This document shows positions 4,340 through 31,913 of a stretch of DNA of 64,000 nucleotides, in pieces. The first letter of the stretch is position 1. Every line of letters starts with the position of its first letter. The position numbers and the translations under genes were made by a program. Location of the stretch: assembly GCF_902713615.1 (NCBI RefSeq), contig NC_052158.1, positions 39,237,729-39,301,728 of the forward strand, written 5' to 3'. This DNA is from Scyliorhinus canicula. Its lineage: Eukaryota. The notes beneath the pieces are model-generated. The model was given only the letters and a program-made list of their open reading frames with translations, was not told where the DNA came from and ran no database searches.

Positions 4340-4650
4340 TCCCCAAGGGCAGTATTTATAAATCAAAGATTGACCTGAGAGACACACACAGGCCAATGGC
4401 CAATATCTCAGTGGTAGATTTTCAGGAGTGTCTTACAGAGAGGCTGCAGTGAGGTGTGTTTTGTTACCTATGTGGTCAGTAACATGTGCTACTCAAAACC
4501 TTGGTTACTGATGCGGTCTCCTGAATCTCAATGAAGAAGACTCAAACTCGTCCAGTGGTAACAAAGGGTTTACTGAGTAACTATAACAATAACTGCACGA
4601 GTTCTTTACTTTAACTTTGATACTGTCATAATATACATCTATGCATTTAA

Positions 4651-4920
4651 GGCAGCAGGGTAGCATGGTGGTGAGCATAAATGCTTCACTGCTCCAGGGT
4701 CCCAGGTACGATTCCCGGCTGGGTCACTGTCTGTGCGGAGTCTGCACATCCTCCCCGTGTGTGCGTGGGTTTCCTCCGGGTGCTCCGGTTTCCTCCCACA
4801 GTCCAAAGATGTGCGGGTTAGGTGGATTGGCTATGCTAAATTGCCCTTAGTGTCCTAAAAAATAAGGTTAATGGGGGGGGGGGGTTACTGGTATAGTGCT
4901 GTACTGTTCTATGTTCTATA
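4651..4920 (+). mobile_element. tRNA-derived SINE (HE1/V-SINE-like) inside the Gypsy A 5' LTR
   Basis: A/B-box-like head, shared central body, GTTCTAT tail; absent from the sister LTR at 8380-8781. Confidence 0.9.
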
Positions 4921-5529
4921 TAATGGTGCAGACAGGCAGTGATTGACACACAGTAAGCACACAGAACAGAGCATCCAATCACCAAACAGGACACTACCAC
5001 TATAAAGCCAGAGGGCACCAGGTTTCCCGCTCTCTCTGGACCCAGCCTCTGAGACAGTCAGAGCTCGTGAGCTAGCCAGTGCAAACACCATAGCTTGAAA
5101 GTCTGGTCAGGCTAGTACTAGGTCTCCAGTCAAGTCAGTATAGTGTCAACCCACAGATGAACATGTATATTAGTTAAGACGTTAAATAAAATCGTGTTGC
5201 ATCTTATCCAGTGTTAGAGGTCTGTCTCTCGCTACACTCATCAAGTGTAGTCCATGTTGACCCAGCCTGCCCAACAGATCATGGTACCAGGTAGTGATGC
5301 TGAAAATTGATGGACCTACCTTGAGTGAATCAGTGTTGACCGGCAAGCAGCCATCCGGCGACATGGGAAACGTCCACCCTCCTCCGCATCGCCAGCAATC
5401 TCGATGCAAACTGGAAGATCTTCAAACAAAAGATGGAAAGGGTGCAGGCTATCGCACAAATGCAGGGCCTAAGCATCGACGAGAGTGGCCATTTCGCGCA
5501 CCTTTTCCGGGCCCCTGCGCATGCGCGCC

Positions 5530-8162
5530 ATGACCGATACAAAATCCTGCTCAAAACGAACGCCACCCCTGTAATTCACGCATCACATCGGGTGCCGGCA
5601 CCCCTCAAGGATCGCCTCAAGCAGCAATTACAGGACCTCCAGGACCAGGGCATCATATCAAAGGTCACAGAACCCACCGACTGGGTCAGCTCCATGGTCT
5701 GCATCAGGAAGCCGTCAGGGGAGCTTCGGATCTGCACCGACCCCAAGGATCGAAACCGCAACATCATGCGGGAGCATTACCCAATACCAAAGCGTGAAGA
5801 GTTGACCAGTGAGATGGCTCATGCCAAATTCTTTACAAAGCTGGACGCCTCCAAGGGATTCTGGCAAATACAGCTGGATGCGTCCAGTCGCAAGCTGTGC
5901 ACATCAATACCCCGTTCGGTCGCTACTGCTACAACCGGATGTGCTTTGGCATCATCTCTGCCTCAGAGATATTTCACCGCATCATGGAACAGATGATGGA
6001 GGGTATCGAGGGGGTGCGAGTGTATGTTGACGATGTCATCATCTGGTCCACAACTCCCCAAGAACACATCGCTCACCTCAAGCAGGTATTCCAGAGAATC
6101 CATGAGCATGGTCTCCAGCTCAACAGGGCCAAGTGCTCGTTCGGTCAATCAGACATCAAATTCCTTGGTGACCACATCTCGCAACAAGGCGTGCGGCCAG
6201 ATGTGACAAGGTTTCGCCGATCAACGCCATGAAGACCCCGGAGGACAAGAAGGCGGTCCTCCACTTTCTTGGGATGGTCAACTTCCTCGGAAAATTAATT
6301 CCCAATATGGCGTCCCACATCACAGCCCTCTGCCATCTCGTCAAAAAGTCGACGGAATTCCAGTGGCTGCCCGCGCATGAAAAGGAATGCCGTGAGGTGA
6401 GGGTGAAGCTCACCACAGCCCCGCTTCTGGTGTTCTTCGACCCAACCAAGGAAACCAAGATATCCACTGACACAAGCCAGGACGGCATTGGGGCGTTGCT
6501 CCTTCAACGGGATGACTCCTCCTCCTGGGCTCCAGTGGCGTATGCCTCCAGAGCCTTGACGCCCACTGAGCAACGGTACGGTCAGATTGAGAAGGAATGT
6601 CTGGGCCTCCTAACGGGAATCGACAAGTTTCACGACTGTGTGTATGGCCTGCCGAAATCCACGACTGAGACGGACCACAGGCCATGAGTCCATATTATCC
6701 AGAAGGATTTAAATGACATGACGCCTCGGTTACAGCGAATCCTTCTTAAGCTACGCTGCTACGACTTTGAACTTGTCTACACGCCAGGCAAAGAGCTCAT
6801 TGTTGCAGATGCCCTTTCCAGGTCCATTCCCACACCATGTGAACAAACTGACTTCATCTGCCACATCAACGAGCAGGTGCAATTGTGTGCCACCAACCGT
6901 CCAGCCTTTGATGAGAGGGTGAACCAAATTTGTGAGGAAACGGCCAAGGATCCTCTGCTGCAGCATGTGATGCAGCACCTTACCTGGCAGAAGGGACAGT
7001 GTCCCCAGTTCTACAACTTCCGGGATGACCTGACGGTGGTGGACGGCATCCTCATGAAGTTCAACAGAATCGTGATTCCTCAGAGCATGCGGGCTAAGGT
7101 GCTCGGCCAACTCCATGAGGGTCACCTGGGGGTCGGGAAATGCCGACGCAGAGCTCAGGAGGCAGTCTATTGGCCGGGCATCAGCCAGGACGTTGCCAAC
7201 ATGGTCCCCAACTGCCCCACCTGTCAGAGGTTTCAGCCAGCTCAACCCAAAGAAACTTTGCCGCAACATGAGATAGTGATCTCTCCGTGGTCCAAAGTCG
7301 GTGTCGACCTTTTCAACGCCAAGGGGCGTGACTACGTCCTCCTGGTCGACTACTTCTCCAGTTACCCAGAAGTGGTGAAACTGTCCGACCTTACGTCGAA
7401 GGCAGTGATCAAAGCCTGCAAAGAAACGTTCGCCAGGCACGGGATACCGCTCACGGTGATGAGTGACAACGGTCCCTGTTTTTACAGCCAGGAATGGTCT
7501 TACAGCTTCCGTCACATAACTTCCAGCCCCCACTACCTGCAGTCAAACAGGAAGGCCGAAAAGGAGTCCATATTGTTAAGAGGTTGCTATGCAGACTCAG
7601 GCTCCGACTTCAACCTGGCGAAGCTGGCATACAGGGCACTACTGGGTTGTCTCCAGCGCAGATGCTCATGAATCGCACTCTGAGGACCATGGTTCCAGCC
7701 ACCCATGTTCCAGACCTTGACCACCTCACGGTTGTAAAAAAAATGCAGCCGTCTTGGGCCCAACAGAAATCCACATATGATGCTCATGCCACGGATCTAC
7801 CCGAGCTGGTCCCAACTGATAGTGTTCGTGTACAGTTGCCTGGGGGCGACTGGTCAGCCACAGCTGTGGTGATCAAGCATGTGGCTCCGAGATCGTTCCT
7901 TGTCCGCATGGCTAATGGCTCCCTGCTCCGGCGCAACAGACGGGCAGTGCGAAGAGTTCCATGCCCGCCACCTGACCAAAATGCCCCGCCACCCACGATG
8001 CTTCCTCTGGACGTGCCCGACCACGAGGCCACCGATCTACCAGCAATCCTGCCGGCCCCTGCGACCACCGCGATGGCAGCGATCCCGCCTATCCAAGTGC
8101 AGGCGGCCCCTGATCCACCCTGCGACGATCAACGGGAATTCGGCGCCCGCCATAAAGACTGA
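5530..8162 (+). pseudogene. pol: Gypsy pol remnant (RT-RNase H-integrase), frameshifted
   Basis: RT (KLDASKGFWQ, YVDD), RNase H (TDTSQDGIG, YGQIEKECL), integrase (HEGH..CPTC, GVDLF, SDNGP) split over ORFs 5433..5996, 5897..6232, 6229..6687, 6718..7671 and 7494..8162. Confidence 0.92.
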
Positions 8163-9579
8163 ATTTATAGACTGAACTTTTGTACATCTTGTTACCTCAT
8201 CGTTTTGACCTCTGTAAATATTGTTTTATCGTTTCATCTGCCCTATATCTGCACTAGCAACACCTTCCTATGTATACAAGTTCATTTGACACATTTTGTA
8301 TATAGTCAGGCACATGTACATATCCACACGCACATGCACCTTAATATTTATTATCTAAAAAAAAAATAAGGGGGGGAGATGTCATAATATACATCTATGT
8401 ATATAATGGAGTGCAGACAGGCAGTGATTGACACACAGGATGACCAGTAAACACACAGAACAGAGCAGCCAATCATCAGACAGGACACTACCACTATAAA
8501 GCCAGAGGGCACTAGGTTTCCCGCTCTCTCTGGACCCAGCCACAGAGACAGTCAGAGTCCACGAGCTAGCCAGTGCAAATACCATGCTGTAGCTAGTAAG
8601 TCTGGTCAGGCTAATACAATGTCTCCAGTCAGTTCAGTATAGTGTCAACCCACAGTTGAACATGTATATTAGTTAAGACGTTAAATAAAATCGTGTTGCA
8701 TCTTATCCAGTGTTAGAGTTGTGTCTCTTGCTACACTGCATCAAGTGCAGTCCACATCGACCCAGCCTGCCTAACACATCAGATACTAGTGATAAGGTTA
8801 ACAAGATGTAACTGTGGTATCTATACATAACTCCCCTAGCCATCTGAACTAGTCTGCTATTGCCCTGGTCACAGTGCACCCAAGAGAGAGAGAGACCAAA
8901 TGCGGTTGCCTTTTATACCCCTGTTGGTCCAGCCCTCTAGTGATCATGTAATGCGACTGATTACGCATTAACCCCTTGTGTACATGCACATATAGATATC
9001 ACAACATCCCCTTTTTTTGTGTTACATATTTTCTGTATGTTGTAAAGAAAATTGAACAAACATAATGGATGCAGTTTGCAAATGCATTACGTAAAATCAA
9101 TGAGTTAGTCCGTCAAATGTTAATACATTTACCCCCTTAGGTTTTTTCGCTTGTGTGAAATAGTTAGACAAATGATGTTATGTACAAGTTGTGATGATCT
9201 TGATGATTATACAAAGCCAATCAATATTTAGGAGTCCAATCTTAATTGAAAAAAAAATCGTGAGTCCATACTTTGAGTTTGTTCTGTTGAATTGCTTTCT
9301 TCTTCTGTTGTTGAAGTGGTGATGTTGATGTTGTTATTTCTTTGTGAACGTCGTCAGTGTTCCTGTGTTTAAACAACCAATAAGTCATCAATGAGGTATT
9401 TGAATGGTCGAATCACTTTGTTGTCTGATTTATGCTTTTTTTTCTATGCTGGCGGTAGCGATTCTGTGTTACATGTTTGTTATCTGACCGGGACTTTTTC
9501 TTCTGTTTGTGATATTTATTCTGTTTGTCATCTTTGTTGTCTGACCTGGACTTTTTCCTGTGTTTGTGGTATTGACCCT

Positions 9580-10574
9580 TGTAGCCACCTAAAATGGACA
9601 CTGGACTAACAAGATGGAGAATTGCTAAGACTGCAGGGAAAAAGCAGTTTAGCCAAGACAGCAGTCTGCAAAGACTGATTAGCATTTTGCAAGCAGCAAA
9701 ACCAGTTTCTGGCCAGGTGCAAGATCTCAAACCAAAGGTGTTAATAGCAAAACGCTTTGCATATTAATGAGGCAATCCAGATCTGGGCACACACAATGGC
9801 AACATTTGGGTTTTGAATAGATACTTTAAGTGGATGTCCAGACAGAGCGGCACCAGAGGTATCCACCACAAAAGACCATAGAGACCGCCCCCTCCATCGA
9901 GGAGAGACCCTCAGATTGGGGAATTAATAAGACATCGATTGAGATTTGATCCAATCGATACCAGAAGGTGAAAGCCCGCCCCAAAAGAGGCACGGACATT
10001 GGGGCCCTATAAAGATAGACCCCCACACATGGTCCTGTCTGTTTGTGCTCCGGCTTTAGCTGTTGTTTTCGTGCTCCGGCTTTGACTTCGACCAAGAACT
10101 TCGACTTGTATCCTGACTCCAGCCGTTGAGCACCAGCCGCCGAACCGTAAGTGACAATACGACGCTCGCTACGCGAACCAGGCCCACTAGACCCCCAGCG
10201 ACCCGCACACTCTCTGAAGGTTACAGACCAAGATCGGAACGAAGGCCTCGCTCCCTGACCTTGCCTGTTCCTGTTTAGTTAAGTATTCTGATCGCTTAAG
10301 TTTAGTTATAGCTTAGTCCTTTAGCGTGTGCATGCGTATTTATTATATTTGTATAATAAATATTGATCGTTTGGAACTTACTAATCGGTGTATCGTTTTA
10401 TTACTTTGAACCTGACCTTGGAATATTTGTGAGGTGTCTAGATACGGCACCTGGCGACTCCCGAGCTGAAAATACATACATAGAGCCTAGCAGTGTTAAG
10501 CACACGGCCTTTAAACGGAGGCGTGTTAATACACTCCAATAAACGCGAATTACACTCAAGTAAAACGTGCAACA
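9580..10574 (+). repeat. LTR copy, inverted relative to gag-pol
   Basis: TGTAGCC...GTGCAACA; TATAAA 10008-10013; AATAAA ~10358 and ~10538; reverse complement of 18475-19469. Confidence 0.93.
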
Positions 10575-10948
10575 TTTAGTGGTTCCCTCCTTGTGATCCT
10601 CACAATCAAAATATTGTGAAGGATCACCTATGCACGTTGCTTCGAGTGCTTCTGGGTGCCTTCTTTGTGTTCCCTGACCTCGGCAAGCTCCTGAGCGTCT
10701 ACTCTGTCCTTGACTATGGGAAGAAAATTTTTTACCTGACATCTCTACTTGGCGCTATGTCAAAGGGGACATGCATTACCAAAAACCGAGAACCTCTACC
10801 TATCACAACTATCCTTATCTTACCTTAAACATTTCATTACAGACTAAACCTCATTCATACCACATCACATAACATTTCCTGACTCGGCAGTCGAGTTCAG
10901 GACAATATAATACATGGGTATATTTTATTTTATTCACACAGTGCTTTA

Positions 10949-11290
10949 TTATTCATTGAGGGGCTGGGGGGATTGATGAAACCGAAAAATAGGGGATTGA
11001 ACTCCATAGACGGTTGAGGGGCAGGAACGGGAGGCTCTCCTCTTCCACTTCCTCAACCTGAGGGTCTGTACGATGATGACGAGGATTGCAATCACTAGCA
11101 GTGATTCAATCACATATGACATGGAGTACCATGTCATAAATTTTGTGCACCAGGTCTGAACCTCACTGATCAGAGCTGAGCACGGGGGAGTTGCTGTGAG
11201 TGAAACATTTACGGCGGGGGTTGTGGGGGAAACGTATCTTGCTTGGACATAAACAAATACAACATTTAAGAGCAATAAGTAGGCTTCCAT
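10949..11290 (-). CDS. Small single-pass membrane protein (113 aa) in the env position; probably expressed from a spliced mRNA
   Basis: ATG 11290 in AAGATGG context; N-terminal hydrophobic stretch, NVS sequon, C-x10-C, TM YVIESLLVIAILVIIVQTL, basic RLRKWKRR; AG acceptor at 11390-11389 with ACTAAC branch-like motif at 11417-11422. Confidence 0.65.
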   Translation of the reverse strand: MEAYLLLLNVVFVYVQARYVSPTTPAVNVSLTATPPCSALISEVQTWCTKFMTWYSMSYVIESLLVIAILVIIVQTLRLRKWKRRASRSCPSTVYGVQSPIFRFHQSPQPLNE

Positions 11291-12183
11291 CTTCCATCTC
11301 TTCGTTCTTTTTCTCTTCCTCCTGTACGGCTGATCCTTGCTGTGACCCCTTTTTCGTCCTTCGAAAGCTATGGGATCAAGCACAGTATCTGTCAATACAG
11401 CTTAATATCCGTACTTGTTAGTGTATCTGTCTTTCAATTCCAATTGACCCATTAAAATGACTGGCCAAGTCACACCCTGTGACTCCCCTCATTTTTTTTT
11501 TCAAAAGCGAATTTATGAACCAGAATACACCTAACAACTCCCCTCCTGCGAGCCGTCTCGCAGGCTTTGCTCATTTACCATCCGAATGTTCCTGGATGTA
11601 AATAGCATGTGGGATGGCGGCCTAAGGGCTGCCTAACGAAAAATGAAAACAAATTTGAAAGAAAAGGTCGAATGGGTTGCGTATGGGCCGCTACGGGTAA
11701 GATTTGAATGGGATCCCCGGGTAGGGCGTGCTGTGCCATACCCGAGCTTGGCTGACCAAAGTGGGTTCTCAGACAGGGCGGGTCCTCAGTGCCGTTTGTC
11801 CACTGCCTGAGTAACCTGGAGTAAACGGGCAAGAATGTGTTTACCGTGGATTTGCAGCCTCTATTCGCCGAATAGAGGGGCACCTAAAAACCAAGGGAGG
11901 AGCCAAGATGCTCCTTTTGAAAAATGAGCTGGGCTTCAGACATTTCAGACGATAAGGTGAGCTGCTCACCATAGAAAGTTCTCAGAGGTATCTGCGGACA
12001 AACTAAAGTGCGTGCGAGGTGGTCACAATCTTTTCAGCTGAAAAGAAGGTGTCCAGCCTCCAACTGAACCAATAATATTCAATACAAACAACATAAACTG
12101 ACAAACAAAAACATACGTGCAGGTTCCATCAGAAAGGACATCGCTTCCCTCAAGCGGTTCCTATTTTACATCATCTGGACACC

Positions 12184-15100
12184 TCACTTTTCCTCTGTCT
12201 CTGTGAACAGGGTCACAAAGGGGTTGCCGTATCGGGATTCAGACACCGTGTCGTCCTGCTCTCCCGGATCCCACACCCTTGTGTGGATCAGGCATGAAAT
12301 CTTTGAATTATGTGACCGGGCGTCACTTTCGTCGTTGCAGACAAGTCTGTACGAATTGTCCCTGTGCCAGAGTGTTGGGTCTAAAAGTGAATGGGTATTG
12401 TCGGGGTAGTCGGGGTCGGGTGGTGGGTCTGGGTTTTTAATGTAAGTGACTTCCATGGGGTCACTGGAGTCGGGGTCATAGTCGCTGCAATGTGGGCTGT
12501 AGTGTGGTGTGCTGTGGCTGTCCTCAGAGTCAGTGTCTGTATCGCTGTCTCTGCTGCGGCAGCTTGTGGGCGTTTCGGGGCGTGGTCTGTCGTGGTCAGT
12601 GGGCGGAGTCGTGGGCGAGTCCGATGAAGAACTGGTCTGTGAGGGGGATGGTGGAAACGTGTCTCTAGTGGGTGGGGTGAGGTGTTCTGCTGCGTCTAGC
12701 AGGACATGGTGTGCATGGTTGGCCTGTGTTCCATATGCCTTTAACTGGTTGATATGGAACCACGCGGTCTTACCATTAGGATATTTTATCCTATAAACTG
12801 AGGGGCTAATTTTATCCGAAATTGAGTATGGGCCGGAATATTTTGGTGCCAAAAAACTGCTGGGGTTGTATACAGATAGCATTACCTGTTGCCCAACCTG
12901 GAATTCTGTGGGGTGTACGGTCTTGTTAAAGCAAGCTGTGCGTTGTCTACGCCGTTTCCCTAGTTGAACTGCGGCTGTGATCTGTGCAGACCTCACAGTC
13001 TCCACCAGGTCTTTAACTGTCTTTTCGTGTGTGAGGGCCGTCACTTCGGGGCTAGTCATGTCCAGTCCTAAAAGGAATTCTGTACCTTTCATAGGGCGTC
13101 CGGTCATGAGTGTGTGTGGTGTGTATCCTGTGGAAGTTGAAACCGTATTTCTGATGAACATGAGTGCAAATGGGAGCACTGAATCCCATGTGGAGTTGTT
13201 TTCTTGTACCATTTTTCTAAGTGTGGATTTTAGGGTCCGATTCATGCGCTCTACAATCCCGCTGGACTGTGGGTGATACGCAATATGAAAGTTTTGTTTT
13301 ATGCCAAATATTGTCAGGACGTTCTTCATGACCCGTCCTGTGAAGTGAGATCCCTGGTCCGAATCAATGCTTCGGGGTAAACCCCATCTCGTGAAGATGT
13401 GGTGGGTCAGGATCTTTGCAGCTGTCTTAGCTGTATTCGTTCTAGAGGGGAATGCCTCTACCCATTTGGTAAAGGTATCGATGACCACCAGAACGTATTT
13501 ATAGCCATTCCTACAAGGGGGCAATGGTCCTATAAAGTCGATCTGGAGGTTTGTCCAGGAGCCATTAACTGGTCGAGTATGCCGAAGTTGTGCCTTTTTA
13601 GAATACCTCTCCGGGTTATTCTGGGCGCAAATAAGGCAATTCTCGATGTAGTAACTTACATCTGTCCTTAGGTTAGGCCACCAACAGAGCTGCCTGAGGT
13701 GCCTCGTGGTTGCGTCGATCCCTTGATGCCCGTGCCCATCATGGAACAAAGCAATCATTTCATTCCTGTCCTGCTGCGGGACCACATAAAGCTGATCCTT
13801 TATGATCACACCCTCATGTGTGGTCAGTGCGTGTCTGAACTTGTCGTACTGGGGCACAAAGTTGCCTTTGAAAATCTCCCTGAGATCCTCATCCTGCTTC
13901 TGTGCCTCTACTAGATCTTTAATATCGGTCTGTGAGACTTGAACTGCGCTCACAGGGGCGCTAGCTGGTGCGCTAGCTGGGGGTGTCCACAAGTGTCCTC
14001 GCCTGGAACCTGCCTTAGCCAGTGCGTCGGCTTTTACATTCCCAGGGGGGGATGATCTATGGTGGCTTCTCACTTTGATAATGCCGAAGGTCCTGTCCTT
14101 CGCTTTCTCTAAAATGTGTTGGAGTAAAGGGGCTGATGGAAGGGGTTTCCCATCTGCGGAGACAAAACCTCGTGTCCTCCACAGGGGCAGAAAATCTGTT
14201 AAACTATTGCAGACATATAGACTGTCCGAATATATGTCCGCTGGGCTGGGGAAAGAATCGGGGTGGTCCACTATATATGCTATGGCCGCGAGCTCTGCTG
14301 CCTGCGCGCCTAAGTGTCCTGGTAATTTTAATGCTATCTCTTCGAGAGCGCGCCCCTGCGCGTCCTCGACATAGATGCCGCATCCTGTGATACGCTCACC
14401 TTCTAAAACCGTTGATGAACCGTCTACGTATCCATAGTGGTCCACACGTGTCTGTGTGTTGGGGGCTTTGTCTGGGGTTCTCTATCTTCCTGGGGGGTGT
14501 CTTTGCTATGAAGGGTCCTGTGTTGTGTAGGGGAGCTACAATCTCACATTCATGGGGCTGTCCTGGGTATTGAAGGTTGTCGGCTAAAAATGTGTGTGTG
14601 CGGGTCCGTTTTACTGTAATGTCCCGTCCTTGTAAGAGTAGTGTCCACCTAGCTGCCCTAATCTGGCTAACTGAACCGTCCTTCAGTCGACGGTCTAGGA
14701 GTAACTGTGTGGGGGTGTGCTCAGTCAAAATGGTGATGGGGTTGAGTCCGGTAATGTACGAAAAGTATTGTACTGCCCAGAAGACTGCAAGGAGGTGCCT
14801 CTCGCAGGCTGAAAATCCTTGTTCCACTGGGTCTAACAGTCGGGAGGCATAAGCCACTGGTCTTAGCTGCTCGTGCTGTTCCTGAAGTAACACAGCCGAG
14901 AGGGTCAGATCTGTGCTCGCTACCTCTATTGCATAGGGGGAAAGTTGGTCTGGGACTTGTAGCGCGGGTGCTGTGCTAAGGGCTTTCTTTAACTCTTCCA
15001 CAGCCTCTGTATGCTGCGGAAGCCATTCCCAGGGGGCTCCTTTCTTAAGGAGGTCTGAGAGTGGGGCTGCTTTTGTCGCGAATCCGTCAATGTGGTTCCG

Positions 15101-16417
15101 ACAATAACCAACCAGTCCTAAGAACGACCGGAGGGCTGAAACATTCTAGGGAAGGGGCAATTTGACAATCGAATCAATTCTTTTGAATTCGATCTCGTGT
15201 TTGCCGTGTGTGATGACTGTTCCCAAATACATCACTTTATTTTCCAAAATCTGGGCCTTTCTTGGGTTAACTTTACAGCCAATTGAGGTTAAAAGTTCCA
15301 GGAGTTCGGCCAGAAGCGTAATGTGCTCTGCCTTTGTGTCTGTCTGCAGTAGTAGGTCGTCTACATACTGTACCAGACATTCGGGGCGGGAAAATTTTTC
15401 TAAACCATTCGCCAGCTGTCGGTGGAAAATGGAGGGGGAATTGTGGAATCCTTGTGGAAGGCATGTCCACGTATACTGTTGAGCTTTGAAGGTGAAGGCA
15501 AATTTGTACTGGCACGCTTTTGCCAATGGTATTGACCAGAAGCCATTGCTAATGTCCAATACCGTGAAGAATTTGGAGTTGAGTCCCTGTTTGAGCATGG
15601 TCTCGGGACTTGTTGCTACCGTGGGGGCTACTGCTGGGGTTACTTTGTTGAGTTCCCGATAATCGATGGTCAGACGCCATGATCCGTCGGGCTTTCTCAC
15701 TGGCCAAATAGGGGCATTATTGGTCGAGGCTACTGTTCTAAGCACACCTTGCTCCAATAAGCTACCTATTACCTTCTCTATTTCTCCCTCTGCTTCTAGG
15801 GGAAATCTGTACTGTTTCTGTGGTCTGGGGTCAGGTCCGGTAACGTGAATTTGTCCAGTCATTCTGCCACAGTCGTGCCGGTGACTGGCAAATGCTGTCC
15901 TATGTTTGTGTAATACTGCCTTAACTTGTCTGTCCGTGTTTAGTGTAGTCAAGTCAAATGAATAGTCTCCTACTGCGCTAATCCTATTAGCGTAGTCTCC
16001 TACTGTGAGGGTAGCGGGTGCTCTGTCCGATCTTGCCATTCGCCAGACACACTGGTTCACTGGGTCGAACGACAGGCTATGTGCATTCATAAAATCTATC
16101 CCTAGGATGTGTTCTGCTGTCCGGGGAAGATTTACTACTACTACTGGGTGTCCGGTGGAAATGTTCCCTGGCTGGATCGCTACGGGTGCTGTGATATGTC
16201 CCTGCTGCGAGTGTCCTGTGAACCCGCTAAGTGTGATGGTGGAGGTGGTCGGCCACGTGTCTGCCTGTGCCGTGGTGGTGGAATTAATTGTGGTGCGGGA
16301 CCCTCCTGTGTCCCAAAGTAATTCTATGGGCTTCCCTCTAACTTTTGCCGTGACTACCGGTCTTCCGGATGGATCCCATAGTGTGTCACAGACCCAAGTG
16401 GGGGAGCCCGAACACCG
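12184..16417 (-). pseudogene. pol: Pol (PR-RT-tether-RNase H-IN) with one nonsense codon and one frameshift
   Basis: PR LLWDTGG; RT PRPQKQY, LPQGF, YVDD; in-frame TAG at 15146-15148; apparent 2-nt deletion near 14430 (restoring it gives PLWIYVDGSS); RNase H AELAAI/DS/GNVKADALAK; IN HHCC and D,D35E (QIDF, SDQG, VERMN). Confidence 0.93.
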
Positions 16418-18160
16418 TCAGTTCGTTCCGTCCACATTGGTGGGTCCTGACTGTATGCCTATACTGTGAATTGGTTTGGCTTTATTGCGATTCAGAGTGC
16501 CTGTCTGCTGGCCTCTCTGTGATCTCTGGGGTCCATTACATTCCTTAGCCCAATGTCCTAACTGGCCATAGTTGTAGCATTCCTGCGACTTCTGTGGAGG
16601 GCTGCTCTTTCCTTCATTTACCCATGCGGGGTTTTGGTGCTCTCTCACTGCCTGTATGTCTGCTGCAGCCTGAGCTTCTGGGGATTTCACTTTGCCTCTG
16701 CCCTGAACTGATTGCTCCCAAGCGCGGGACAATCTTTTCAGGACCCACTTCTCATTATGGGCCTCTTCTGAGGGGTCATAGCTGTTGCAAGCGCTCTGTC
16801 CTGCTTCTGTGGCATGAGAAATTATGGTGCGCGTCCATTTAACCATATTTTCTCGGTTCAAATGGGCTCTATTTAAATCGCCAAATACTGCGTTAAAATG
16901 GATCCACAGCCTTCCTGCGAATGCTGTGGGGTGCTCGGTTTTCTTCTGTCGGCACTTATTAAGTCCTTCTACGGGGTCACCTCGATTATACCCTATGGCA
17001 TCTAAAATGGAGGTGTGCATTTCCTCTAGGGTGCCTCCGCCAACGTTCTGTGGGTCGGGGAGGGCTGCTACTACCGATTGGTCCAAACTCAGAACTGTGA
17101 GTTTAACCTGCTCTCTCTCGTCCAGGCCGTACATGGTTGCCTGTTGCTTTACCTTTGCGAAAAACTGGTGGGGGTCTGCGGTGGGGAGAAACGGAGTGAT
17201 CTTCTCACACGCGTCCCTGAGTTGGGTTACAGTTAAGGGGGTGGTGTAGGTGATATCGGGTGCGCCTTCTGTGGTCGCTTTCCTCTGGGTGGTGACTGGA
17301 TTTATTGGTACGGTAACTATTTGATCTGTGGGGGGTTGGGGTGCTTGTCTTTTCTGCTGCGCTGCTGGCGCACATGTTCCCTGAACATAACGCTGCGCTG
17401 TCTCACTTAACTTTTTCCAGTCTGGGGCATTCTCCTCATCTAACTGCGTTCCAAAGGTGCTTTGAAACCCATTTTGCACTGAAAGCAGCGATTGCAGCTC
17501 CGCAATCTGTTTCCTGCATTTCGCATGGTCTACAGTACTCTGTCTTTGTTCTGTGGTGGCAGCATGGAGTGCTCTCAAAGCTGCTTTAAGGTCAGAGCAT
17601 TGCCTCTGCAAAGCCTCTACCTGCTTCTCTGATTCTTCTCTTATCAGGACGGCCCGTTGCACGTCCTGATAGGCCTTTTCGTACTGGGTCTGGGAACTGC
17701 TGAGATGGGCTAGACAAGACTGATATGCCCTCTTGGCATCATCCACCTCTCTACCTTTCTCTGCCAACTTCCCTCTAAGATCCGTATTCTCTTTCTCGAT
17801 GTCCCTGACATCCACTTTACTCATTCTATTTCTTTCTTCTAATTCTGCCCGGAGCGTCTGAACGACCTCCTCTGTGCCTCGCAATTGTGCCAAACAGGAC
17901 ACAATCGCCATCGGCTTACGTGCTTTACTCATATTTTTCTTGTGAATTTGAGAGAGGTTCTCCCACCAAGTATGTCCTATACTTCCGGGACCTGTCTCCT
18001 CATTCAAACAAAACTCTTTCCAAAGGGGCCATCCCTTTCCTTGCAGATACTTGCGGAGTTCCAGCTCCCACACGGGACACTGACCTACTCGGCTACTGCT
18101 GGTCGCTGCGACCACAAACCGTTCTGGGTTCATGAGGCGTTCCATTGCCTGCATGGCCAT
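16418..18160 (-). CDS. gag: Gag (coiled-coil region, capsid-like region, zinc knuckle with one Cys to Tyr change)
   Basis: 580-aa ORF after the 5' LTR; CYNYGQLGHWAKEC knuckle; ends in TGA in frame with the protease. Confidence 0.9.
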   Translation of the reverse strand: MAMQAMERLMNPERFVVAATSSSRVGQCPVWELELRKYLQGKGWPLWKEFCLNEETGPGSIGHTWWENLSQIHKKNMSKARKPMAIVSCLAQLRGTEEVVQTLRAELEERNRMSKVDVRDIEKENTDLRGKLAEKGREVDDAKRAYQSCLAHLSSSQTQYEKAYQDVQRAVLIREESEKQVEALQRQCSDLKAALRALHAATTEQRQSTVDHAKCRKQIAELQSLLSVQNGFQSTFGTQLDEENAPDWKKLSETAQRYVQGTCAPAAQQKRQAPQPPTDQIVTVPINPVTTQRKATTEGAPDITYTTPLTVTQLRDACEKITPFLPTADPHQFFAKVKQQATMYGLDEREQVKLTVLSLDQSVVAALPDPQNVGGGTLEEMHTSILDAIGYNRGDPVEGLNKCRQKKTEHPTAFAGRLWIHFNAVFGDLNRAHLNRENMVKWTRTIISHATEAGQSACNSYDPSEEAHNEKWVLKRLSRAWEQSVQGRGKVKSPEAQAAADIQAVREHQNPAWVNEGKSSPPQKSQECYNYGQLGHWAKECNGPQRSQRGQQTGTLNRNKAKPIHSIGIQSGPTNVDGTN

Positions 18161-18474
18161 TTTTCTGACTCACTTTAATTTGGAACAGGGGGTGTTGAGG
18201 TTATGTCTCACGAAACGGGTAAGGCTTACGCTATGTTCCGTTCACAAAACTACCGAAAGTTTGTCGCAACAAAAATGCTTTCAGGTTTTCCTTACAACCC
18301 TGTTAGTACGCATGCACTAAACACACTTCCGAATTACGTTTATTCCTTCGAACACCTTCAATATTTGTGATTTCTTTCCTTTTTCTTTACCAGATTTCTA
18401 ATTCAAATTTCAGGGTCCTCGACGGAGTGGGGGTACCACTTATAGCCGTGTCCCGTCAGGAAGTCGCCACTAAA

Positions 18475-19469
18475 TGTTGCACGTTTTACTTGAGTGTAAT
18501 TCGCGTTTATTGGAGCGTATTAACACGCCTCCGTTTAAAGGCCGTGTGCTTAACACTGCTAGGCTCTATGTATGTATTTTCAGCTCGGGAGTCGCCAGGT
18601 GCCGTATCTAGACACCTCACAAATATTCCAAGGTCAGGTTCAAAGTAATAAAACGATACACCGATTAGTAAGTTCCAAACGATCAATATTTATTATACAA
18701 ATATAATAAATACGCATGCACACGCTAAAGGACTAAGCTATAACTAAACTTAAGCGATCAGAATACTTAACTAAACAGGAACAGGCAAGGTCAGGGAGCG
18801 AGGCCTTCGTTCCGATCTTGGTCTGTAACCTTCAGAGAGTGTGCGGGTCGCTGGGGGTCTAGTGGGCCTGGTTCGCGTAGCGAGCGTCGTATTGTCACTT
18901 ACGGTTCGGCGGCTGGTGCTCAACGGCTGGAGTCAGGATACAAGTCGAAGTTCTTGGTCGAAGTCAAAGCCGGAGCACGAAAACAACAGCTCAAGCCGGA
19001 GCACAAACAGACAGGACCATGTGTGGGGGTCTATCTTTATAGGGCCCCAATGTCTGTGCCTCTTTTGGGGCGGGCATTCACCTTCAGGTATCGTTTGGAT
19101 CAAATCTCAATCGATGTCTTATTAATTCCCCAATCTGAGGGTCTCTCCTCGATGGAGGGGGCGGTCTCTATGGTCTTTTGTGGTGGATACCTCTGGTGCC
19201 GCTCTGTCTGGACATCCACTTAAAGTATCTATTCAAAACCCAAATGTCGCCATTGTGTGTGCCCAGATCTGGATTGCCTCATTAATATGCAAAGCATTTT
19301 GCTATTAACACCTTTGGTTTGAGATCTTGCACCTGGCCAGAAACTGGTTTTGCTGCTTGCAAAATGCTAATCAGTCTTTGCAGACTGCTGTCTTGGCTAA
19401 ACTGCTTTTTCCCTGCAGTCTTAGCAATTCTCCATCTTGTTAGTCCAGTGTCCATTTTAGGTGGCTACA
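18475..19469 (-). repeat. 5' LTR, sense to gag-pol
   Basis: Same sequence read on the minus strand; TATA box and splice donor (CC|GTAAGT at 18903/18902) point towards gag. Confidence 0.93.
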
Positions 19470-19649
19470 CCCTATATGTGATCTTTCTTGAAAGCTGGTT
19501 TTCTTGTTTGTTGTGGAGCAAATGTGAATTTGTGAGATTTGTTGCCATGCCATGGCATGTTTGTACTCTTGCCATTGTTTTGCAGTGTGCTGTTGCATTG
19601 TCCTTCATGTGCCGAGTTGTACCATGTTGTACAGGCCGCTGTTTCATTG

Positions 19650-20885: not shown

Positions 20886-23850
20886 TTGTGCAGTGTACTC
20901 GCTGAACAGTCGGTCTGTGCTCTCTCAACAGTCGTTCTGTGCTCTCTGTGTGGCGTCGTCTTCTTCTTGGGTATTTGACAGGTTGCTGTCATCCAATGTA
21001 TCAACAATCTCCCATGGCATCATGGTATTGGATTTATCTACCATAAGTAGAGTCATGTTGAGCTTTGCAACCGTGTTGCTGATGCTGCGATCAGCATATC
21101 CGAATAACTCAGCCATGTCCGAGTCGTATTGTGTGTGTATTGTTCGGTCGACAAACCATCTCTTTTTGTTTTGGAGTTGTTACCGTTCTCGTCATGTTCA
21201 ATGTACAAATCACCTTCTTGGGTTTCGGATTTGCCATTGTGCCACTTTGGGTGGTACAGACTGCTTGCTCCAGGGTGTTGTGAAAGTTATTTTCAACTGC
21301 TGGTGTAAGTTCGGGCATTGTTCTGTCTTTTGAGGCAAGAAAATTGAGTTTTACAGCTTTACATTTCTTTTTGTTCATTTACGTGTATTTTGCTTTTAAG
21401 TGGGCGTGGTCCGGGTCCTCTGACATCATGACGCTCATGACGTCATGCGTAGAAGTCGATTGCGCGTGCGCAATTAGAGTTTCCTTTACTGCGCGCTCTT
21501 TTCGCAACTGTGCATGCGCGGCTTCCCGAGTGGATTTTGCCGTTTTCCTTCTTTTTGAGAAGTGCGCATGTACGTACTGGCCGGAACGTTCTCTCTCAAG
21601 ATGGCTGCCAATCAGAAAGTGCTGTTGCATCGAGTGAGAATCTGCCTCTGCCTCGTCGTGAGTGTTTGCGCCATTTTTACCGATTTTGTTTTCTAGATAC
21701 TGATTCTGTGTTTGTAAAGACTCACAGTATTGATTTTGTTTTTGTTCATAAGCAAGTCATTTTTGTACAGCAATTTCTAGAGTTAGATACCTATCTTGTG
21801 AAATTTTTTCCTTCAAATTTTTGTCAGATAGTTCATAAATTAATTGATCCATTATCAGTGTCTCTGAAATCAGCATAATCACAGCCTTGTGATATTAACT
21901 TGAGGTTTGTAATAAAATCAGTGATGGGTACTCCGTTTCTCTGGCATTTACAACAAGAGTTAAATCTTTCCAGCATCTCACCAGACTGACTCTAACAGTG
22001 TTCATCACATTTTTTGAGTATTACTTTTAATTTGGAGTTGGCTTCACCTTCTCAGTAATTAAAGCAATTATAGATTTCTCTAGCTTCATGCCCTTCTATT
22101 GAGAGTAGTCGTGCTATTTTTGTTGCATCAGAGACCGTGCTTAAATTATTAGCTGCAATAAATATTTGGAATATCTGTTCAAATCTTTTCCAGTCATAAA
22201 TTAAATTACTGGTTGTTTCCAGCTGCCCTGGAGGCCCAATGAGTCTCATAGTTAGTCGTCGAGTATCCATTTGTTGCAAAGTCTTCCATAATCGAATGTC
22301 TGGTCTGAATTTTATTCTCTTTTTGTCGAATCTAATCTAACTAGTTCTGTTAAATCTAATATGCCTGGTACCATGTTTTGTTACCTGTGTGGTAGGTAAC
22401 ATGTGCTACTCAAACCTTGGTTAGTGATGAGGTCTTCTGAATCTCGATGAAGAAGACTCAAACTCATCCAGTAGTAACAAAAGGTTTACTGAGTAACTTT
22501 AATAGTAAGTGCATGAGTTATTTCCTTTAACTTTGATACTGGTGATAAGGTTAACAAGATATAACTAGAGTAACTATAAGTAACTCCACTAGCCATCTGA
22601 ACTAGTCTGCTATTGCCCTGGTTACAGTGCACCCAAGAGAGACCCAGAGACCCAATATGGTTGCCTTTTATACCCCTGTTGGTCCGGCCCTCTAGTGATC
22701 ATGTGGTGCTACTGATTACACATTAACCCCTTGTGTACATGCACATATAGAGATCACTACAAGGTGGACGGAGGGGATTGCAGAGTGAAGGACCGAGGCT
22801 GCTGAAGGCAAAGCCCCCAGTGTGGGCCAATTATAATCCCTGATACCGGAGATGTCAGAATTAGAGGAACGCAGAGATCACACAGAGTTAGTGGAGCTGG
22901 AAGAGGTTACAGAAACAGGAAGGGGCAAAGATATGGAGGGTTTACAATTTCTTTAACAAGTATTTTTATTGAAGTTTTTCATTTTAACAAATAACCCAAC
23001 AAAACTACAGGAAAGCTACAGCTCAGCAAATATGTCTTGACGCACATGGATATGGAGGGGAACAGCGACAAAACTGACTCAATATAATTATTAGACTAAA
23101 CCAAGGGAACAATGGAGACCAGGATCAGGCCATGAAATTATGGTAAATGTTTCACCCCTTCCCATTCAGCAATTGTCCACAACTACCACGAGAATTGAGG
23201 ATATCACGCCATGTTCAGGTGGGCCTGATACATACCTCCCTCAACTTCAGCAACATCAGAGGCACCAATGACACACTGTAACCCCCTCCCCTCGGATAAC
23301 AGACCTGGCTGTACCCCTGCGGGAGCCAAACAAGGATTCTTTAACCCCGTCACAACAAAAATAGAGAAAATATAAAGTAAATTTGTGAGATCTCCAGGAG
23401 GATATTTTACATAAACCACAAGACGCAACATAATCCCAACCTCAGGCAGAGTTTAGAATGATCATCAGTCCACATATTTATACAAGAGGACCAGCAGCTA
23501 TAGATTCGGATTATAGACGGTATGGTCAGCTCTTCCCAACAACTTCATCCAGACAGGATAAAAGAAAACCGGAAAATTACCAGGAGCAGAGGGTCGTGAA
23601 AGAATTAAGGGTCCATATTCCTTTGGCACAACCCACCACCAAATGAAGAAGAAGAGAAAAGGCTGCTCGTTCAGGCAGGACATCCCAGCCATAAGGCGGG
23701 GTGGGGGGCAATAGGATATCGAGCACTGAGCAGGACCCGGCTCAACCCCACACCCTCGGGCACTATGGTGTCAGTGAACCAAAGACACTCAAAACACATT
23801 AAAACTCAGCCTCAGGGTATCCCTAATGAGTGCCTTCGAGAAGAGATGTC

Positions 23851-24180
23851 CCACGGTAGCATGGTGGTTAGCATCAATGCTTCACAGCTCCAGGGTCCCA
23901 GGTTCGATTCCCGGCTGGGTCACTGTCTGTGTGGAGTCTGCACGTCCTCCCGGTGTGTGCGTGGGTTTCCTCCGGGTGCTCCGGTTTCCTCCCACAGTCC
24001 AAAGATGTGCGGGTTAGGTGGATTGGCCATGCTAAATTGCCCGTAGTGTAAGGCTAATGGGGGGATTGTTGGGTTACGGGTATACGGGTTACGTGGGTTT
24101 AAGTAGGGTGATCATTGCTCGGCACAACATCGAGGGCCGAAGGGCCTGTTCTGTGCTGTACTGTTCTATGTTCTATGTTC
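23851..24180 (+). mobile_element. tRNA-derived SINE with CR1-type tail
   Basis: Same family as 4651-4920; its 3' end matches the CR1 3' end at ~39465-39530. Confidence 0.9.
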
Positions 24181-30135: not shown

Positions 30136-30544
30136 CTCCGGTCTGATCTGTCGGCTGGTGAGGAACCTCGAACAGTTCAAGTACTTGCTCCGTGTCCTTC
30201 AGCGCCACTGGACCACATCAGATGTATGTTTACCCTTTGGTGGGAAATGTGTTCATTCCAGAATTGAGGAACGTTCTGGTGGCTCAACGTGACAAACACC
30301 TTGCCGGGAGAGAGGGGGGGGGGGGGGGGGGGGGGGGCATCGGGGGTGGAATTCTCTGGGTCGTCCCGTCACTAGCGAGAATCACAATGTTCCGTTGAAT
30401 CAGTCGTGAGGCCAAACCCATTGTGAGTCTCCCGGCCCCGCCCACCGGCCCGACTCCTGTCAAATCCCGTGTCCCAACCAACGCGATTCATGTCACTGCC
30501 AGGAGGGGCAGATTCTGCCCAATGTGTTCACTGTTGGGGGGGGG

Positions 30545-31078
30545 GGGGGTCGAGGATCCCAGTGTCTCCTCTCTTTACACTGGAGCTGCTGGACGAGGTC
30601 TCTACAATCTCACTGTGAGGGGGGGAGTCCAGGGTCCCAGTGTCTCCTCTCTTTACACTGGGGCTGCTGGGCGAGGTCTCTACAATCTCACTGTGAGGGG
30701 GGAGTCCAGGGTCCCAGTGTCTCCTCCCTTTACACTGGAGCTGCTGGGCGAGGTCTCTTCAATCTCACTGTGAGGGGGGAGTCCAGGGTCCCAGTGTCTC
30801 CTCTCTTTACACTGGAGCTGCTGGACGAGGTCTCTTCAATCTCACTGTGAGGGGGGAGTCCAGGGTCCCAGTGTCTCCTCTCTTTACACTGGAGCTGCTG
30901 GACGAGGTCTCTTCAATCTCACTGTGAGGGGGGAGTCCAGGGTCCCAGTGTCTCCTCTCTTTACACTGGAGCTGCTGGACGAGGTCTCTTCAATCTCACT
31001 GTGAGGGGGGAGTCCAGGGTCCCAGTGTCTCCTCTCTTTACACTGGAGCTGCTGGACGAGGTCTCTTCAATCTCACTC
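30545..31078. repeat. 77-bp minisatellite, ~7 copies
   Basis: CTGTGA recurs at 30613, 30691, 30768, 30845, 30922 and 30999. Confidence 0.95.
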
Positions 31079-31595: not shown

Positions 31596-31913
31596 GGCAG
31601 CACGGTACCACAAGGGATTAGCACTGGTTTCATAGTGCCAGGGTCCCAGGTTCGATTCCCTGCTGGGTTACTGTCTATGCAGAGTCTGCACGTTCTCCCC
31701 GTGTCTGCATGGATTTCCTCCGGAGTGCTCCGGTTTCCTCCCACAGCTCAAAGAAGTGCAGGTTAGGTGGATTGGCCATGATAAATTGCCATTAGAGACC
31801 AAAAAAAGTTAGGAGGGGTCATTCAGTTACGGGCACGGGTGGAATGAGGGCTTAAGTGGGTCGGTGCAGACACGATGGGCTGAATGGCCTCCTTCTGCAC
31901 TGTATGTTCTATG
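31596..31913 (+). mobile_element. tRNA-derived SINE
   Basis: GGCAGCACGGT head, GTTCGATTCC B-box, CR1-type tail. Confidence 0.88.

What the first reader, a model, noticed from the sequence alone, without database searches (positions are those of the whole stretch)
9580..19469. Retrovirus-like element whose two LTRs are inverted, yet integrated as one unit with a clean TSD
Seen in sequence: 9580-10574 and 18475-19469 are reverse complements (995 bp each; about 8 substitutions and no indels by eye). The element therefore reads 5'-TGTAGCC...GGCTACA-3', with the promoter (U3) end of the LTR at both termini. A 4-bp TSD (CCCT) flanks the whole unit, and removing it rejoins the host Gypsy B reading frame (KITYRV|NTTNTG), which argues against two chance insertions or an ectopic inversion. 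Established: Ortervirales with a DDE integrase make direct LTRs through two strand transfers; retroelements with inverted ends (DIRS) use tyrosine recombinase, whereas this one has an HHCC/DDE integrase. Inference: either a family with a different replication scheme, a rare aberrant reverse-transcription product that integrase still accepted (both ends are valid TG..CA), or a mis-assembly. Both LTR promoters face inward, so convergent transcription and dsRNA are also predicted.
Basis: partly seen in the sequence, partly recalled or inferred. Interest (0 to 1): 0.93.

Follow-up and report, generated by a model that had tools for sequence, protein, structure and literature searches.

The report
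Shark endogenous retrovirus with one flipped LTR
A young foamy-virus-like endogenous retrovirus in a shark genome really does carry its two 1-kb terminal repeats in opposite orientation. The inner junction looks like a one-off accident of reverse transcription that the viral integrase still inserted, not a new way of replicating.

Summary
Arms 9580-10582 and 19469-18467 are reverse complements: a 995-nt LTR plus 8 further shared nt, with 8 substitutions and no indels. Both outer ends are U3 ends, flanked by a CCCT duplication.

The body lies on the minus strand: 5' LTR, spacer, TGG-initiated primer-binding site, gag, pol, a small membrane-protein ORF, and a 10-nt polypurine tract. Its RT and integrase are closest to foamy-virus enzymes among solved structures.

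The key new point is the inner junction. The 3' end of the polypurine tract is fused to the unprocessed U5 end of an LTR that still carries the 5-nt spacer and the first 3 nt of the primer-binding site. These are two natural reverse-transcription termini.

My reading is an aberrant cDNA integrated through two U3 ends with the 4-bp duplication typical of foamy-type integrases. This copy has no tyrosine recombinase, no internal complementary region and no sense-oriented 3' R, so I do not support a family-wide inverted-LTR replication scheme.

No other copy of the family could be retrieved, so "one-off" is inferred, not shown. One published guppy foamy-like ERV also has an inverted LTR, left unexplained there. 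Mis-assembly and host rearrangement are unlikely but not excluded.

The parts
9576..9579 (.). Left copy of the 4-bp target-site duplication (CCCT)
   Evidence: chance of a 4-nt match about 0.008 at local composition
9580..10574 (+). Flipped LTR, 995 nt, reading U3-R-U5 on the + strand, so it is antisense to the body. Its U3 end faces the host DNA. TATA box at 10008-10013; AATAAA at LTR nt 776 and 959.
10575..10582 (+). Eight nt shared with the sequence downstream of the other LTR: the 5-nt spacer (TTTAG) plus the first 3 nt (TGG) of the primer-binding site. This marks the inner end of the arm as an unprocessed U5 / strong-stop-type end.
   Evidence: an 8/8 match by chance is about 1.5e-5
10583..10592 (-). 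Polypurine tract (10 purines on the coding strand) abutting the flipped arm directly
   Evidence: 16 purine runs of at least 10 nt in 9.9 kb, so a chance abutment is about 0.002
10593..12183 (-). Post-pol region with no detectable env. It contains an open 148-codon ORF (10949-11395) for a small membrane protein conserved in Scyliorhinus canicula gene models.
12184..16417 (-). pol (RT, RNase H-like tether, RNase H, HHCC/DDE integrase with SH3-like C-terminal domain). It follows gag in the same frame after the gag stop. It is broken by one in-frame stop and one frameshift.
16418..18160 (-). gag, an open 580-codon ORF with a zinc-knuckle-like motif that scores below the Pfam threshold
18452..18469 (-). 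Primer-binding-site-like 18 nt beginning TGG. The primer tRNA was not identified.
   Evidence: no tRNA gene in the window
18470..18474 (-). 5-nt spacer (TTTAG) between the LTR and the primer-binding site
18475..19469 (-). 5' LTR in the sense orientation of the body, with its U3 end facing the host DNA
19470..19473 (.). Right copy of the target-site duplication (CCCT)

Best explanation
This is a single, young, foamy-like (class III-related) endogenous retrovirus whose 3' LTR was attached the wrong way round before or during integration. What the sequence shows: on the coding strand the body runs to a polypurine tract. This is the site where RNase H normally creates the plus-strand primer end. 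At that point the body is fused to the complement of [LTR + 5-nt spacer + first 3 nt of the primer-binding site]. That is the end which the tRNA primer defines for minus-strand and plus-strand strong-stop DNA, and it was not trimmed by integrase. So two natural reverse-transcription termini were joined without homology. What I infer: either a plus-strand strong-stop DNA that had copied only 3 nt of the primer switched template end-to-end onto a plus-sense strand ending at the polypurine tract, or a double-stranded LTR-sized intermediate was joined in flipped orientation by host end joining. The end joining could have happened before integration, or after concerted integration of U3 ends from two DNA molecules. 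Either way the product has a U3 end at both termini. A foamy-type integrase then made a concerted insertion with its characteristic 4-bp duplication. The copy is a dead end. Its sense transcript has no 3' R for the first strand transfer, and pol now carries one stop and one frameshift. Predicted consequences: both LTR promoters point inward, giving convergent transcripts and a panhandle-forming sense RNA, and the element cannot collapse to a solo LTR.
For: Arms, termini and TSD. Eight extra shared nt (spacer + TGG) at the inner end of the flipped arm. A 10-nt purine run abuts them, with chance about 0.002. Ordinary retroviral layout with a primer-binding site only at the right arm. Integrase with HHCC and D,D,E, closest to prototype foamy virus integrase (1.5e-40); RT closest to foamy PR-RT (5.9e-45). 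Foamy virus integrase concertedly inserts pairs of identical ends with a 4-bp duplication, and spumaviruses process only the U5 end: PMC2615609. A 4-nt TSD is the rule in fish foamy-like ERVs: PMC5210030. Aberrant, asymmetric-LTR proviruses attributed to strong-stop DNA switching between co-packaged genomes are frequent in vivo: PMC9278108. Four of the 8 arm differences are CpG transitions, as expected for two physical copies ageing in a methylated genome. No internal copy of the LTR ends and no tyrosine recombinase. The conserved 3' ORF shows the body is the family's genuine 3' part.
Against: No second copy of the family could be read, so neither the normal polypurine-tract/U3 junction nor the rarity of the inverted form is shown. 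The exact 3' end of the polypurine tract is uncertain by about 2 nt. The 3-nt primer-binding-site remnant alone has a 1/64 chance expectation. No microhomology explains the join. A fold-back self-priming variant, suggested by the imperfect inverted repeat between U3 nt 1-17 and the U5-end/primer-binding-site start, predicts a junction 5 nt different from the one observed. The TSD is only 4 bp. Four clustered transversions in U3 (LTR nt 376-478) are unexplained.
Confidence: 0.65

Rival explanations
1. Post-integration host event or composite. Either two insertions of the same family lie in opposite orientation and a deletion fused the 5' LTR + 8 nt of one to the body of the other, or a replication-based or inversion rearrangement flipped the 3' LTR in place.
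For: The region is a dense TE pile with other inverted structures, for example the LINE pair at 37367-43495. The published guppy case was tentatively ascribed to recombination. The TSD is only 4 bp.
Against: A composite needs three coincidences: a chance TSD (about 0.8%), a deletion ending at a purine tract (about 0.2%), and a cut 8 nt past the other LTR. An in-place flip would not add the 8 nt copied from downstream of the 5' LTR. A simple inversion of the body predicts a direct right LTR without those 8 nt, which is not what is seen. No similarity exists between 10583-12183 and the leader or gag of the element. Ectopic recombination between inverted copies leaves each element with direct LTRs (established knowledge).
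Confidence: 0.12
2. Assembly artefact: the flipped arm does not exist in the animal's genome.
For: It cannot be excluded without reads. Repeat-rich shark assemblies are error-prone, and the same window holds another large inverted duplication.
Against: There are no gaps in the window, so no scaffolding flip is possible. The arms differ at 8 sites, half of them CpG transitions, so they are not copies of one read set. A fold-back chimera would duplicate the adjacent sequence, not a segment 7.9 kb away. Both edges of the arm coincide to the base with biological boundaries: U3 end + TSD on one side, U5 + spacer + TGG against the purine tract on the other.
Confidence: 0.1
3. Family trait: a DDE-integrase retroelement lineage that normally carries inverted LTRs and replicates by a non-canonical scheme.
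For: A second foamy-like ERV, guppy PrERV-1, is reported with an inverted LTR and low LTR divergence (PMC5210030). No direct-LTR copy of this shark family could be inspected.
Against: This copy has the canonical asymmetry: a primer-binding site beside one arm and a polypurine tract beside the other. It has no internal region complementary to the arm ends. A transcript started in the right LTR would end without a sense R. The partial primer-binding-site remnant at the flipped arm is what an accident leaves, not a designed terminus. All other fish foamy-like ERVs described have direct LTRs.
Confidence: 0.04

Closest known systems
Foamy-like endogenous retroviruses of fish, amphibians and sharks (FLERVs; PMC5512871, PMC5210030)
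   Same: Retroviral RT, tether, RNase H and HHCC/DDE integrase, closest to foamy virus enzymes among solved structures. About 1-kb LTRs and a 4-bp TSD. Protein relatives in Scyliorhinus, Heptranchias, Xenopus, eel and coelacanth.
   Different: The 3' LTR is inverted. No env is detectable, only a small membrane-protein ORF. gag has a zinc-knuckle-like motif, and pol follows gag in frame after one stop, unlike true spumaviruses. The foamy GGGTG tract/LTR motif cannot be scored here.
Guppy PrERV-1, a foamy-like ERV reported with an inverted LTR (Ruboyianes & Worobey 2016, PMC5210030)
   Same: A young foamy-like provirus with one LTR inverted and low LTR divergence (0.005 there, 0.008 here).
   Different: That paper calls the 5' LTR the inverted one, gives no junction or TSD analysis, and leaves the cause open ('recombination, but this is unclear'). 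I could not obtain its sequence, so I do not know whether the junctions are of the same type.
Defective HIV-1 proviruses with asymmetric LTRs or inversions (PMC9278108)
   Same: Products of faulty strand transfer during reverse transcription that are nevertheless integrated. The proposed mechanism there uses plus-strand strong-stop DNA switching between the two co-packaged genomes.
   Different: Those have deleted LTRs or internally inverted segments with normal U3...U5 termini. Here a whole LTR is flipped and both termini are U3.
DIRS retrotransposons
   Same: A retroelement with inverted terminal repeats.
   Different: DIRS use a tyrosine recombinase, carry an internal complementary region and make no TSD. 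Here there is a DDE integrase, no such region and a 4-bp TSD.
Autointegration (intramolecular integration) products of retroviral DNA
   Same: They can place the two LTRs in inverted orientation (own knowledge of the classical MLV/ASLV literature, not checked in a paper here).
   Different: They are circles joined through integrase-processed CA ends. Here the inner junction keeps the unprocessed spacer and primer-binding-site nucleotides, and the unit is inserted in host DNA through its two U3 ends.

Membership tests
Retroviridae-like ERV (LTR element with DDE integrase) | RT, RNase H and HHCC/DDE integrase encoded in pol | tested here: met
   Pfam RVT_1, RT_RNaseH(_2), RNase_H, Integrase_H2C2, rve and SH3. 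H,H,C,C and D,D,E align with PFV integrase.
Retroviridae-like ERV (LTR element with DDE integrase) | Primer-binding site after the 5' LTR and polypurine tract before the 3' LTR | tested here: met
   A TGG-initiated 18-mer lies 5 nt after the right LTR. A 10-nt purine run abuts the left arm. The tRNA was not identified.
Retroviridae-like ERV (LTR element with DDE integrase) | Two LTRs in direct orientation | tested here: not met
   The arms are reverse complements. This is the anomaly.
Retroviridae-like ERV (LTR element with DDE integrase) | Short target-site duplication of genus-typical length | tested here: met
   CCCT on both sides. 4 bp is the spumavirus/gammaretrovirus length (PMC2615609; PMC5210030).
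Spumaretrovirinae / foamy-like ERVs | RT and integrase closer to foamy viruses than to other retroviral genera | tested here: met
   Among solved structures, PFV integrase scores 1.5e-40 against 8e-14 or weaker for other retroviral integrases and 6e-30 for the Ty3 polyprotein. Foamy PR-RT scores 5.9e-45 against about 1e-29 for MLV/XMRV. No phylogeny was made.
Spumaretrovirinae / foamy-like ERVs | gag without a Cys-His motif; pol expressed separately from gag | tested here: not met
   There is a zinc-knuckle-like match in gag, below the Pfam threshold (17.8 against 20.8 bits). pol continues in the gag frame after a single stop.
Spumaretrovirinae / foamy-like ERVs | GGGTG motif at the polypurine tract/3' LTR border | tested here: inconclusive
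   The tract is not followed by a U3 end in this copy. It ends ...GGGAA. A normal copy is needed.
Spumaretrovirinae / foamy-like ERVs | env gene after pol | tested here: not met
   No Pfam hit and no similarity to the env-like ORF of relative L002. There is only a 148-codon membrane-protein ORF.
DIRS retrotransposons | Tyrosine recombinase instead of a DDE integrase | tested here: not met
   Only a DDE integrase was found.
DIRS retrotransposons | Internal complementary region matching the ends of the terminal repeats | tested here: not met
   The U3-end and U5-end probes and a self-BLAST find no internal copy.
DIRS retrotransposons | No target-site duplication | tested here: not met
   A 4-bp TSD is present.
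Aberrant reverse-transcription product integrated by integrase | The internal junction coincides with natural reverse-transcription termini, while the outer ends are integrase-competent LTR ends with a TSD | tested here: met
   Purine-tract end joined to U5 + spacer + TGG. TG...CA termini and CCCT TSD.
Aberrant reverse-transcription product integrated by integrase | Rarity: other copies of the family have the normal form | not testable with these tools
   The DNA of the Scyliorhinus relatives was not retrievable. Exact-sequence look-up and pattern scans found no other copy.

The most novel reading that the evidence does not exclude
Foamy-like retroviruses may be prone to making and integrating U3/U3 'flipped-LTR' genomes. 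Their integrase needs no processing at U3 and readily pairs identical ends, and their reverse transcription is late and DNA-rich. Under this reading the shark copy and guppy PrERV-1 are two samples of a recurrent, lineage-typical by-product. In the extreme version, a sub-lineage propagates with inverted LTRs.
Probability: 0.08. Interest if true: 0.8.

Novelty: new variant of a known kind. Interest (0 to 1): 0.5.

Why it matters
If the locus is real, it is a natural record that a retroviral integrase inserted a genome carrying two U3 ends in the germ line. It also preserves, to the base, the junction of a failed strand transfer: the polypurine-tract end joined to an unprocessed U5 / primer-binding-site end. 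Such fossils show which illegitimate reverse-transcription products occur and survive in vivo.

The locus also gives a second, better-resolved example next to an unexplained guppy case in the same viral lineage.

For genome annotation it is a warning. LTR-pair finders that require direct repeats will miss or mis-split such copies. LTR dating still works, but the arms cannot recombine to a solo LTR.

The inward-facing promoters make the locus a candidate source of double-stranded RNA and small RNAs against its own family. It does not change the textbook replication scheme.

Tried and rejected
**Attempts to read other copies of the family**
- DNA of the closest relatives was not retrievable because the sample files are too large. 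These are the Scyliorhinus torazame gag and integrase genes (71-81% aa identity) and the S. canicula homologues of the 3' ORF.
- The window's own ORFs are not in the protein collection.
- A 20-nt U5/primer-binding-site probe found nothing in IMG/VR. It found one hit in metagenomes, which has no other similarity and is a chance match.
- A more distant relative, L002 (37% Pol identity; gag-pol-env-like on a 9.9-kb Logan contig), has no second LTR on the contig. It says nothing about LTR orientation.
- The exhaustive representative search with a 102-aa post-pol ORF gave only weak, uninformative hits.

**Origin models rejected**
- In-place inversion of the 3' LTR: does not explain the 8 extra nt.
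- Inversion of the body alone: predicts a direct right LTR.
- Autointegration: the junction would be at a processed CA end.
- Microhomology-guided switches through TTCC/GGAA, or through the U3 / U5-primer-binding-site inverted repeat: they predict 4-5 extra nt that are absent.
- DIRS-like design.

**Other checks without a positive result**
- The 57-nt tandem-repeat units on the two flanks are no more alike than shuffled sequence (36 of 300 shuffles reach the observed score). Flank contiguity therefore rests on the TSD and on composition only.
- No tRNA gene and no Rfam family was found in the window.


Full report
**Observation**

The window holds one long inverted repeat in the stated region, 9580-10591 against 18458-19469: 1012 nt, 99% complementary, 7866 nt apart.
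- Compared base by base, the two arms differ at 8 positions of the 995-nt LTR and have no indels.
- The next 8 nt (TTTAGTGG) are also identical, and similarity then ends. The shared unit is therefore 1003 nt.
- Both arms begin TGTAGCC at their outer ends. A 25-nt probe of that end occurs only there.
- CCCT flanks the unit on both sides. A 4-nt match is expected in about 0.8% of cases at the local composition.
- The window contains no N.

**Anatomy**

The body is on the minus strand. Reading down from 19469, it contains:
- the 5' LTR (19469-18475; TATA at LTR nt 429, AATAAA at nt 776 and 959)
- a 5-nt spacer
- an 18-nt primer-binding-site-like sequence beginning TGG
- gag, an open 580-codon ORF with a sub-threshold zinc-knuckle match
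- pol (12184-16417), with RT, the RNase H-like tether, RNase H, and an HHCC/DDE integrase with an SH3-like C-terminal domain
- about 1.6 kb without env
- a 10-nt purine run at 10592-10583

pol continues in the gag frame after the gag stop. It is broken once by an in-frame stop and once by a frameshift.

All four zinc-binding residues and all three catalytic carboxylates of the integrase align with prototype foamy virus integrase.

Among solved structures, the integrase is closest to foamy virus integrase (1.5e-40) and the RT to foamy PR-RT (5.9e-45). Both are well ahead of gammaretroviral, lentiviral and Ty3 enzymes.

Database relatives are 'NYNRIN-like' or 'GIN1-like' ERV-derived proteins of Scyliorhinus torazame (81% in the integrase, 71-79% in gag), Heptranchias, eel, Xenopus and coelacanth. 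This fits the shark/frog foamy-like ERV group described in PMC5512871. The source is probably a catshark relative; this is an inference.

The post-pol region has no similarity to the env-like ORF of a more distant relative. It does contain an open 148-codon ORF for a small membrane protein that is 59% and 50% identical to parts of two S. canicula gene models. The 3' part of the body is therefore genuine family sequence.

**The inner junction**

This is the new and informative point. On the coding strand the purine run is followed immediately by the complement of TGG, then the complement of the 5-nt spacer, then the complement of U5-R-U3.
- The flipped arm is not a bare LTR. It is an LTR that still carries what lies downstream of a 5' LTR, up to 3 nt into the primer-binding site. 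This is the end that the tRNA primer defines for strong-stop DNA. It has not been trimmed by integrase.
- Its partner is a polypurine tract, the site where RNase H creates the plus-strand primer end.
- An 8/8 match has a chance expectation of about 1.5e-5.
- There are 16 purine runs of at least 10 nt in the 9.9-kb element. The chance that the junction abuts the 3' end of one is about 0.002.

Two natural termini of reverse transcription have been joined head to head, without usable microhomology.

**Most likely mechanism**

Shown: the structure above, the two U3 termini, the 4-bp TSD, and a foamy-type DDE integrase.

Established background:
- Foamy virus integrase concertedly inserts pairs of identical viral ends with a 4-bp duplication in over 80% of products.
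- Spumaviruses process only the U5 end (PMC2615609).
- Fish foamy-like ERVs have 4-nt TSDs (PMC5210030).
- Integrated proviruses with asymmetric LTRs are common in vivo and are explained by strong-stop DNA switching between the two packaged genomes (PMC9278108).

Inferred: a cDNA with the 3' LTR attached the wrong way round arose in one of two ways.
- (a) By a non-homologous end-to-end template switch. A plus-strand strong-stop DNA that had copied only 3 nt of the primer switched onto a plus-sense strand ending at the polypurine tract. Ordinary minus-strand completion then followed.
- (b) By end joining of an LTR-sized double-stranded intermediate in flipped orientation. This could have happened before integration, or after concerted integration of U3 ends belonging to two DNA molecules.

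The sequence cannot separate (a) from (b). In both, integrase sees two U3 ends, which in foamy viruses need no processing.

The copy could not have been a template for further canonical replication, because a transcript from the right LTR ends without a sense R.

**Age and state**

Eight differences in 995 nt (0.8%) indicate a young insertion. At a rate of about 1e-9 per site per year this is a few million years; the rate is my assumption.
- Four differences are CpG transitions. This fits decay of two physical copies in a methylated genome and argues against an assembly duplicate.
- The other four are transversions clustered at LTR nt 376-478. I cannot explain them. If model (a) with two different genomes applies, some differences could predate integration.

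**Rivals**

- *Composite of two insertions plus a deletion.* This needs a chance TSD, a deletion ending at a purine tract and a cut 8 nt past the other LTR. There is also no similarity between 10583-12183 and the element's leader or gag.
- *In-place flip, or inversion of the body.* Neither reproduces the duplicated 8 nt.
- *Autointegration products.* These join processed CA ends and are circles.
- *DIRS-like design.* Excluded: no tyrosine recombinase, no internal complementary region, and a TSD is present.
- *Mis-assembly.* Not testable here but improbable. There are no gaps, the arms differ, the flipped segment lies 7.9 kb from its partner, and both its edges fall on biological boundaries.
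- *Family-wide inverted-LTR replication.* Nothing in this copy supports it. However, I could not inspect any other copy, so 'one-off' remains an inference.

**Precedent**

A full-text search found one directly relevant statement. In the guppy, the foamy-like PrERV-1 'has an inverted 5' LTR'. Its LTR divergence is 0.005, and the cause is given as possibly recombination 'but this is unclear' (PMC5210030).
- No junction analysis is given, and no supplement is held.
- Two young foamy-like ERVs with a flipped LTR in distant hosts may be coincidence, or may hint at a lineage propensity. That is the novel case I keep open at low probability.

**The host site**

The insertion lies in T-rich, A-poor low-complexity DNA with tandem repeats on both sides.
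- Five ORFs of at least 100 aa overlap there on both strands and none has a Pfam domain.
- The Gypsy-like RT and integrase ORFs at 5433-8162 are on the + strand. They appear to be bounded by LTR-like repeats at about 4457-5281 and 8394-9006. That would place the insertion outside that element.
- The repeat units on the two flanks are not significantly alike.

**Predicted consequences (inferred, not tested)**

- Both LTR promoters face inward, so sense and antisense transcripts of the body are expected.
- The sense RNA would carry R-U5 at its 5' end. It would carry the complement of part of U5 at its 3' end before the first antisense AATAAA (complements of TTTATT at LTR nt 760 and 818), allowing a panhandle.
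- The arms cannot recombine to a solo LTR, but they could flip the body.

1. I stopped, used none of them in any tool or conclusion, and left the primer tRNA unidentified.
3. My first notebook entry lists the bounds of the separate ORF pieces of pol as given by the ORF listing, which implies where pol is interrupted.

**Verdict**

This is a real, rare structural variant of an ordinary kind of element. Its junction points to faulty reverse transcription followed by integrase action on two U3 ends. It is interesting to retrovirologists as a natural fossil of that process. It is not evidence for a new replication mode.

Noticed in passing
window 10949-11395 (minus strand): An open 148-codon ORF between pol and the polypurine tract encodes a small membrane protein: hydrophobic N-terminus, an NVS site, one transmembrane helix and a basic tail. 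It is 59% and 50% identical to the C-terminal two thirds of two multi-exon Scyliorhinus canicula gene models (P0104, P0105) and has no Pfam family. It may be an accessory or mini-env-like gene of this ERV family, possibly expressed by splicing.
   Followed up: partly
window 36591-43495: A LINE with an APE+RT ORF (36591-39434) faces an inverted partial second copy. Arms 37367-39514 and 41174-43495 are 95-97% identical, and GC skew flips sign near 40 kb. It may be two insertions tail to tail or an inverted duplication.
   Followed up: partly
window 4646-4896, 23852-24084, 31629-31807, 36173-36335, 42436-42876, 43654-43872, 45147-45356, 48692-48860, 56881-57059: A roughly 200-nt interspersed (SINE-like) repeat occurs at nine or more places at 72-95% identity. 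At 42568-42876 two copies form a 309-nt palindrome. No Rfam family matches anywhere in the window.
   Followed up: partly
window 4457-9006 and 22374-22761: A Gypsy-like element on the + strand has a weak RT match at 5433-5996 and HHCC/rve at 6718-7671. LTR-like repeats lie at about 4457-5281 (split by a SINE-like insertion) and 8394-9006, and a third partial copy at 22374-22761. The ERV insertion site seems to lie outside it.
   Followed up: partly
window 25231-28050 (minus strand): hAT-type transposase remnants: a hAT dimerisation domain in ORF 25231-26106 and a weak DUF4371 match in ORF 26677-28050.
   Followed up: no
window 59632-61593 (+ strand): An open 653-codon gag-like ORF with a good CCHC zinc knuckle. 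It is unrelated to the gag of the inverted-LTR element except at the knuckle, so it belongs to another retroelement.
   Followed up: partly
window 30543-31154, 34985-35775, 53235-54955, 55090-56000, 57372-58000: Several minisatellite arrays with unit lengths of 77, 37, 83, 15 and 59 nt. Some create long spurious ORFs on both strands.
   Followed up: no
LTR nt 376-478 (window 9955-10057 and 18992-19094): Four of the eight differences between the arms are transversions clustered within about 100 nt of U3, three of them within 19 nt. The other four are CpG transitions. The clustering is unexpected for random decay and is unexplained.
   Followed up: no
window 19450-19469 against 18460-18477 (and the mirror positions in the left arm): The first 17 nt of U3 are an imperfect inverted repeat of the U5 end + spacer + first 7 nt of the primer-binding site: 13 of 16 aligned columns with two 1-nt gaps, and 26 of 2000 shuffles score as well. 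It may reflect integrase-recognition symmetry. A fold-back priming model based on it misses the observed junction by 5 nt.
   Followed up: partly
L001:5695-5714 (metagenome contig Ga0163150_10000793): There is an exact 20-nt match to the U5/primer-binding-site probe with no other similarity to the window. It is a chance hit in a very large collection.
   Followed up: yes
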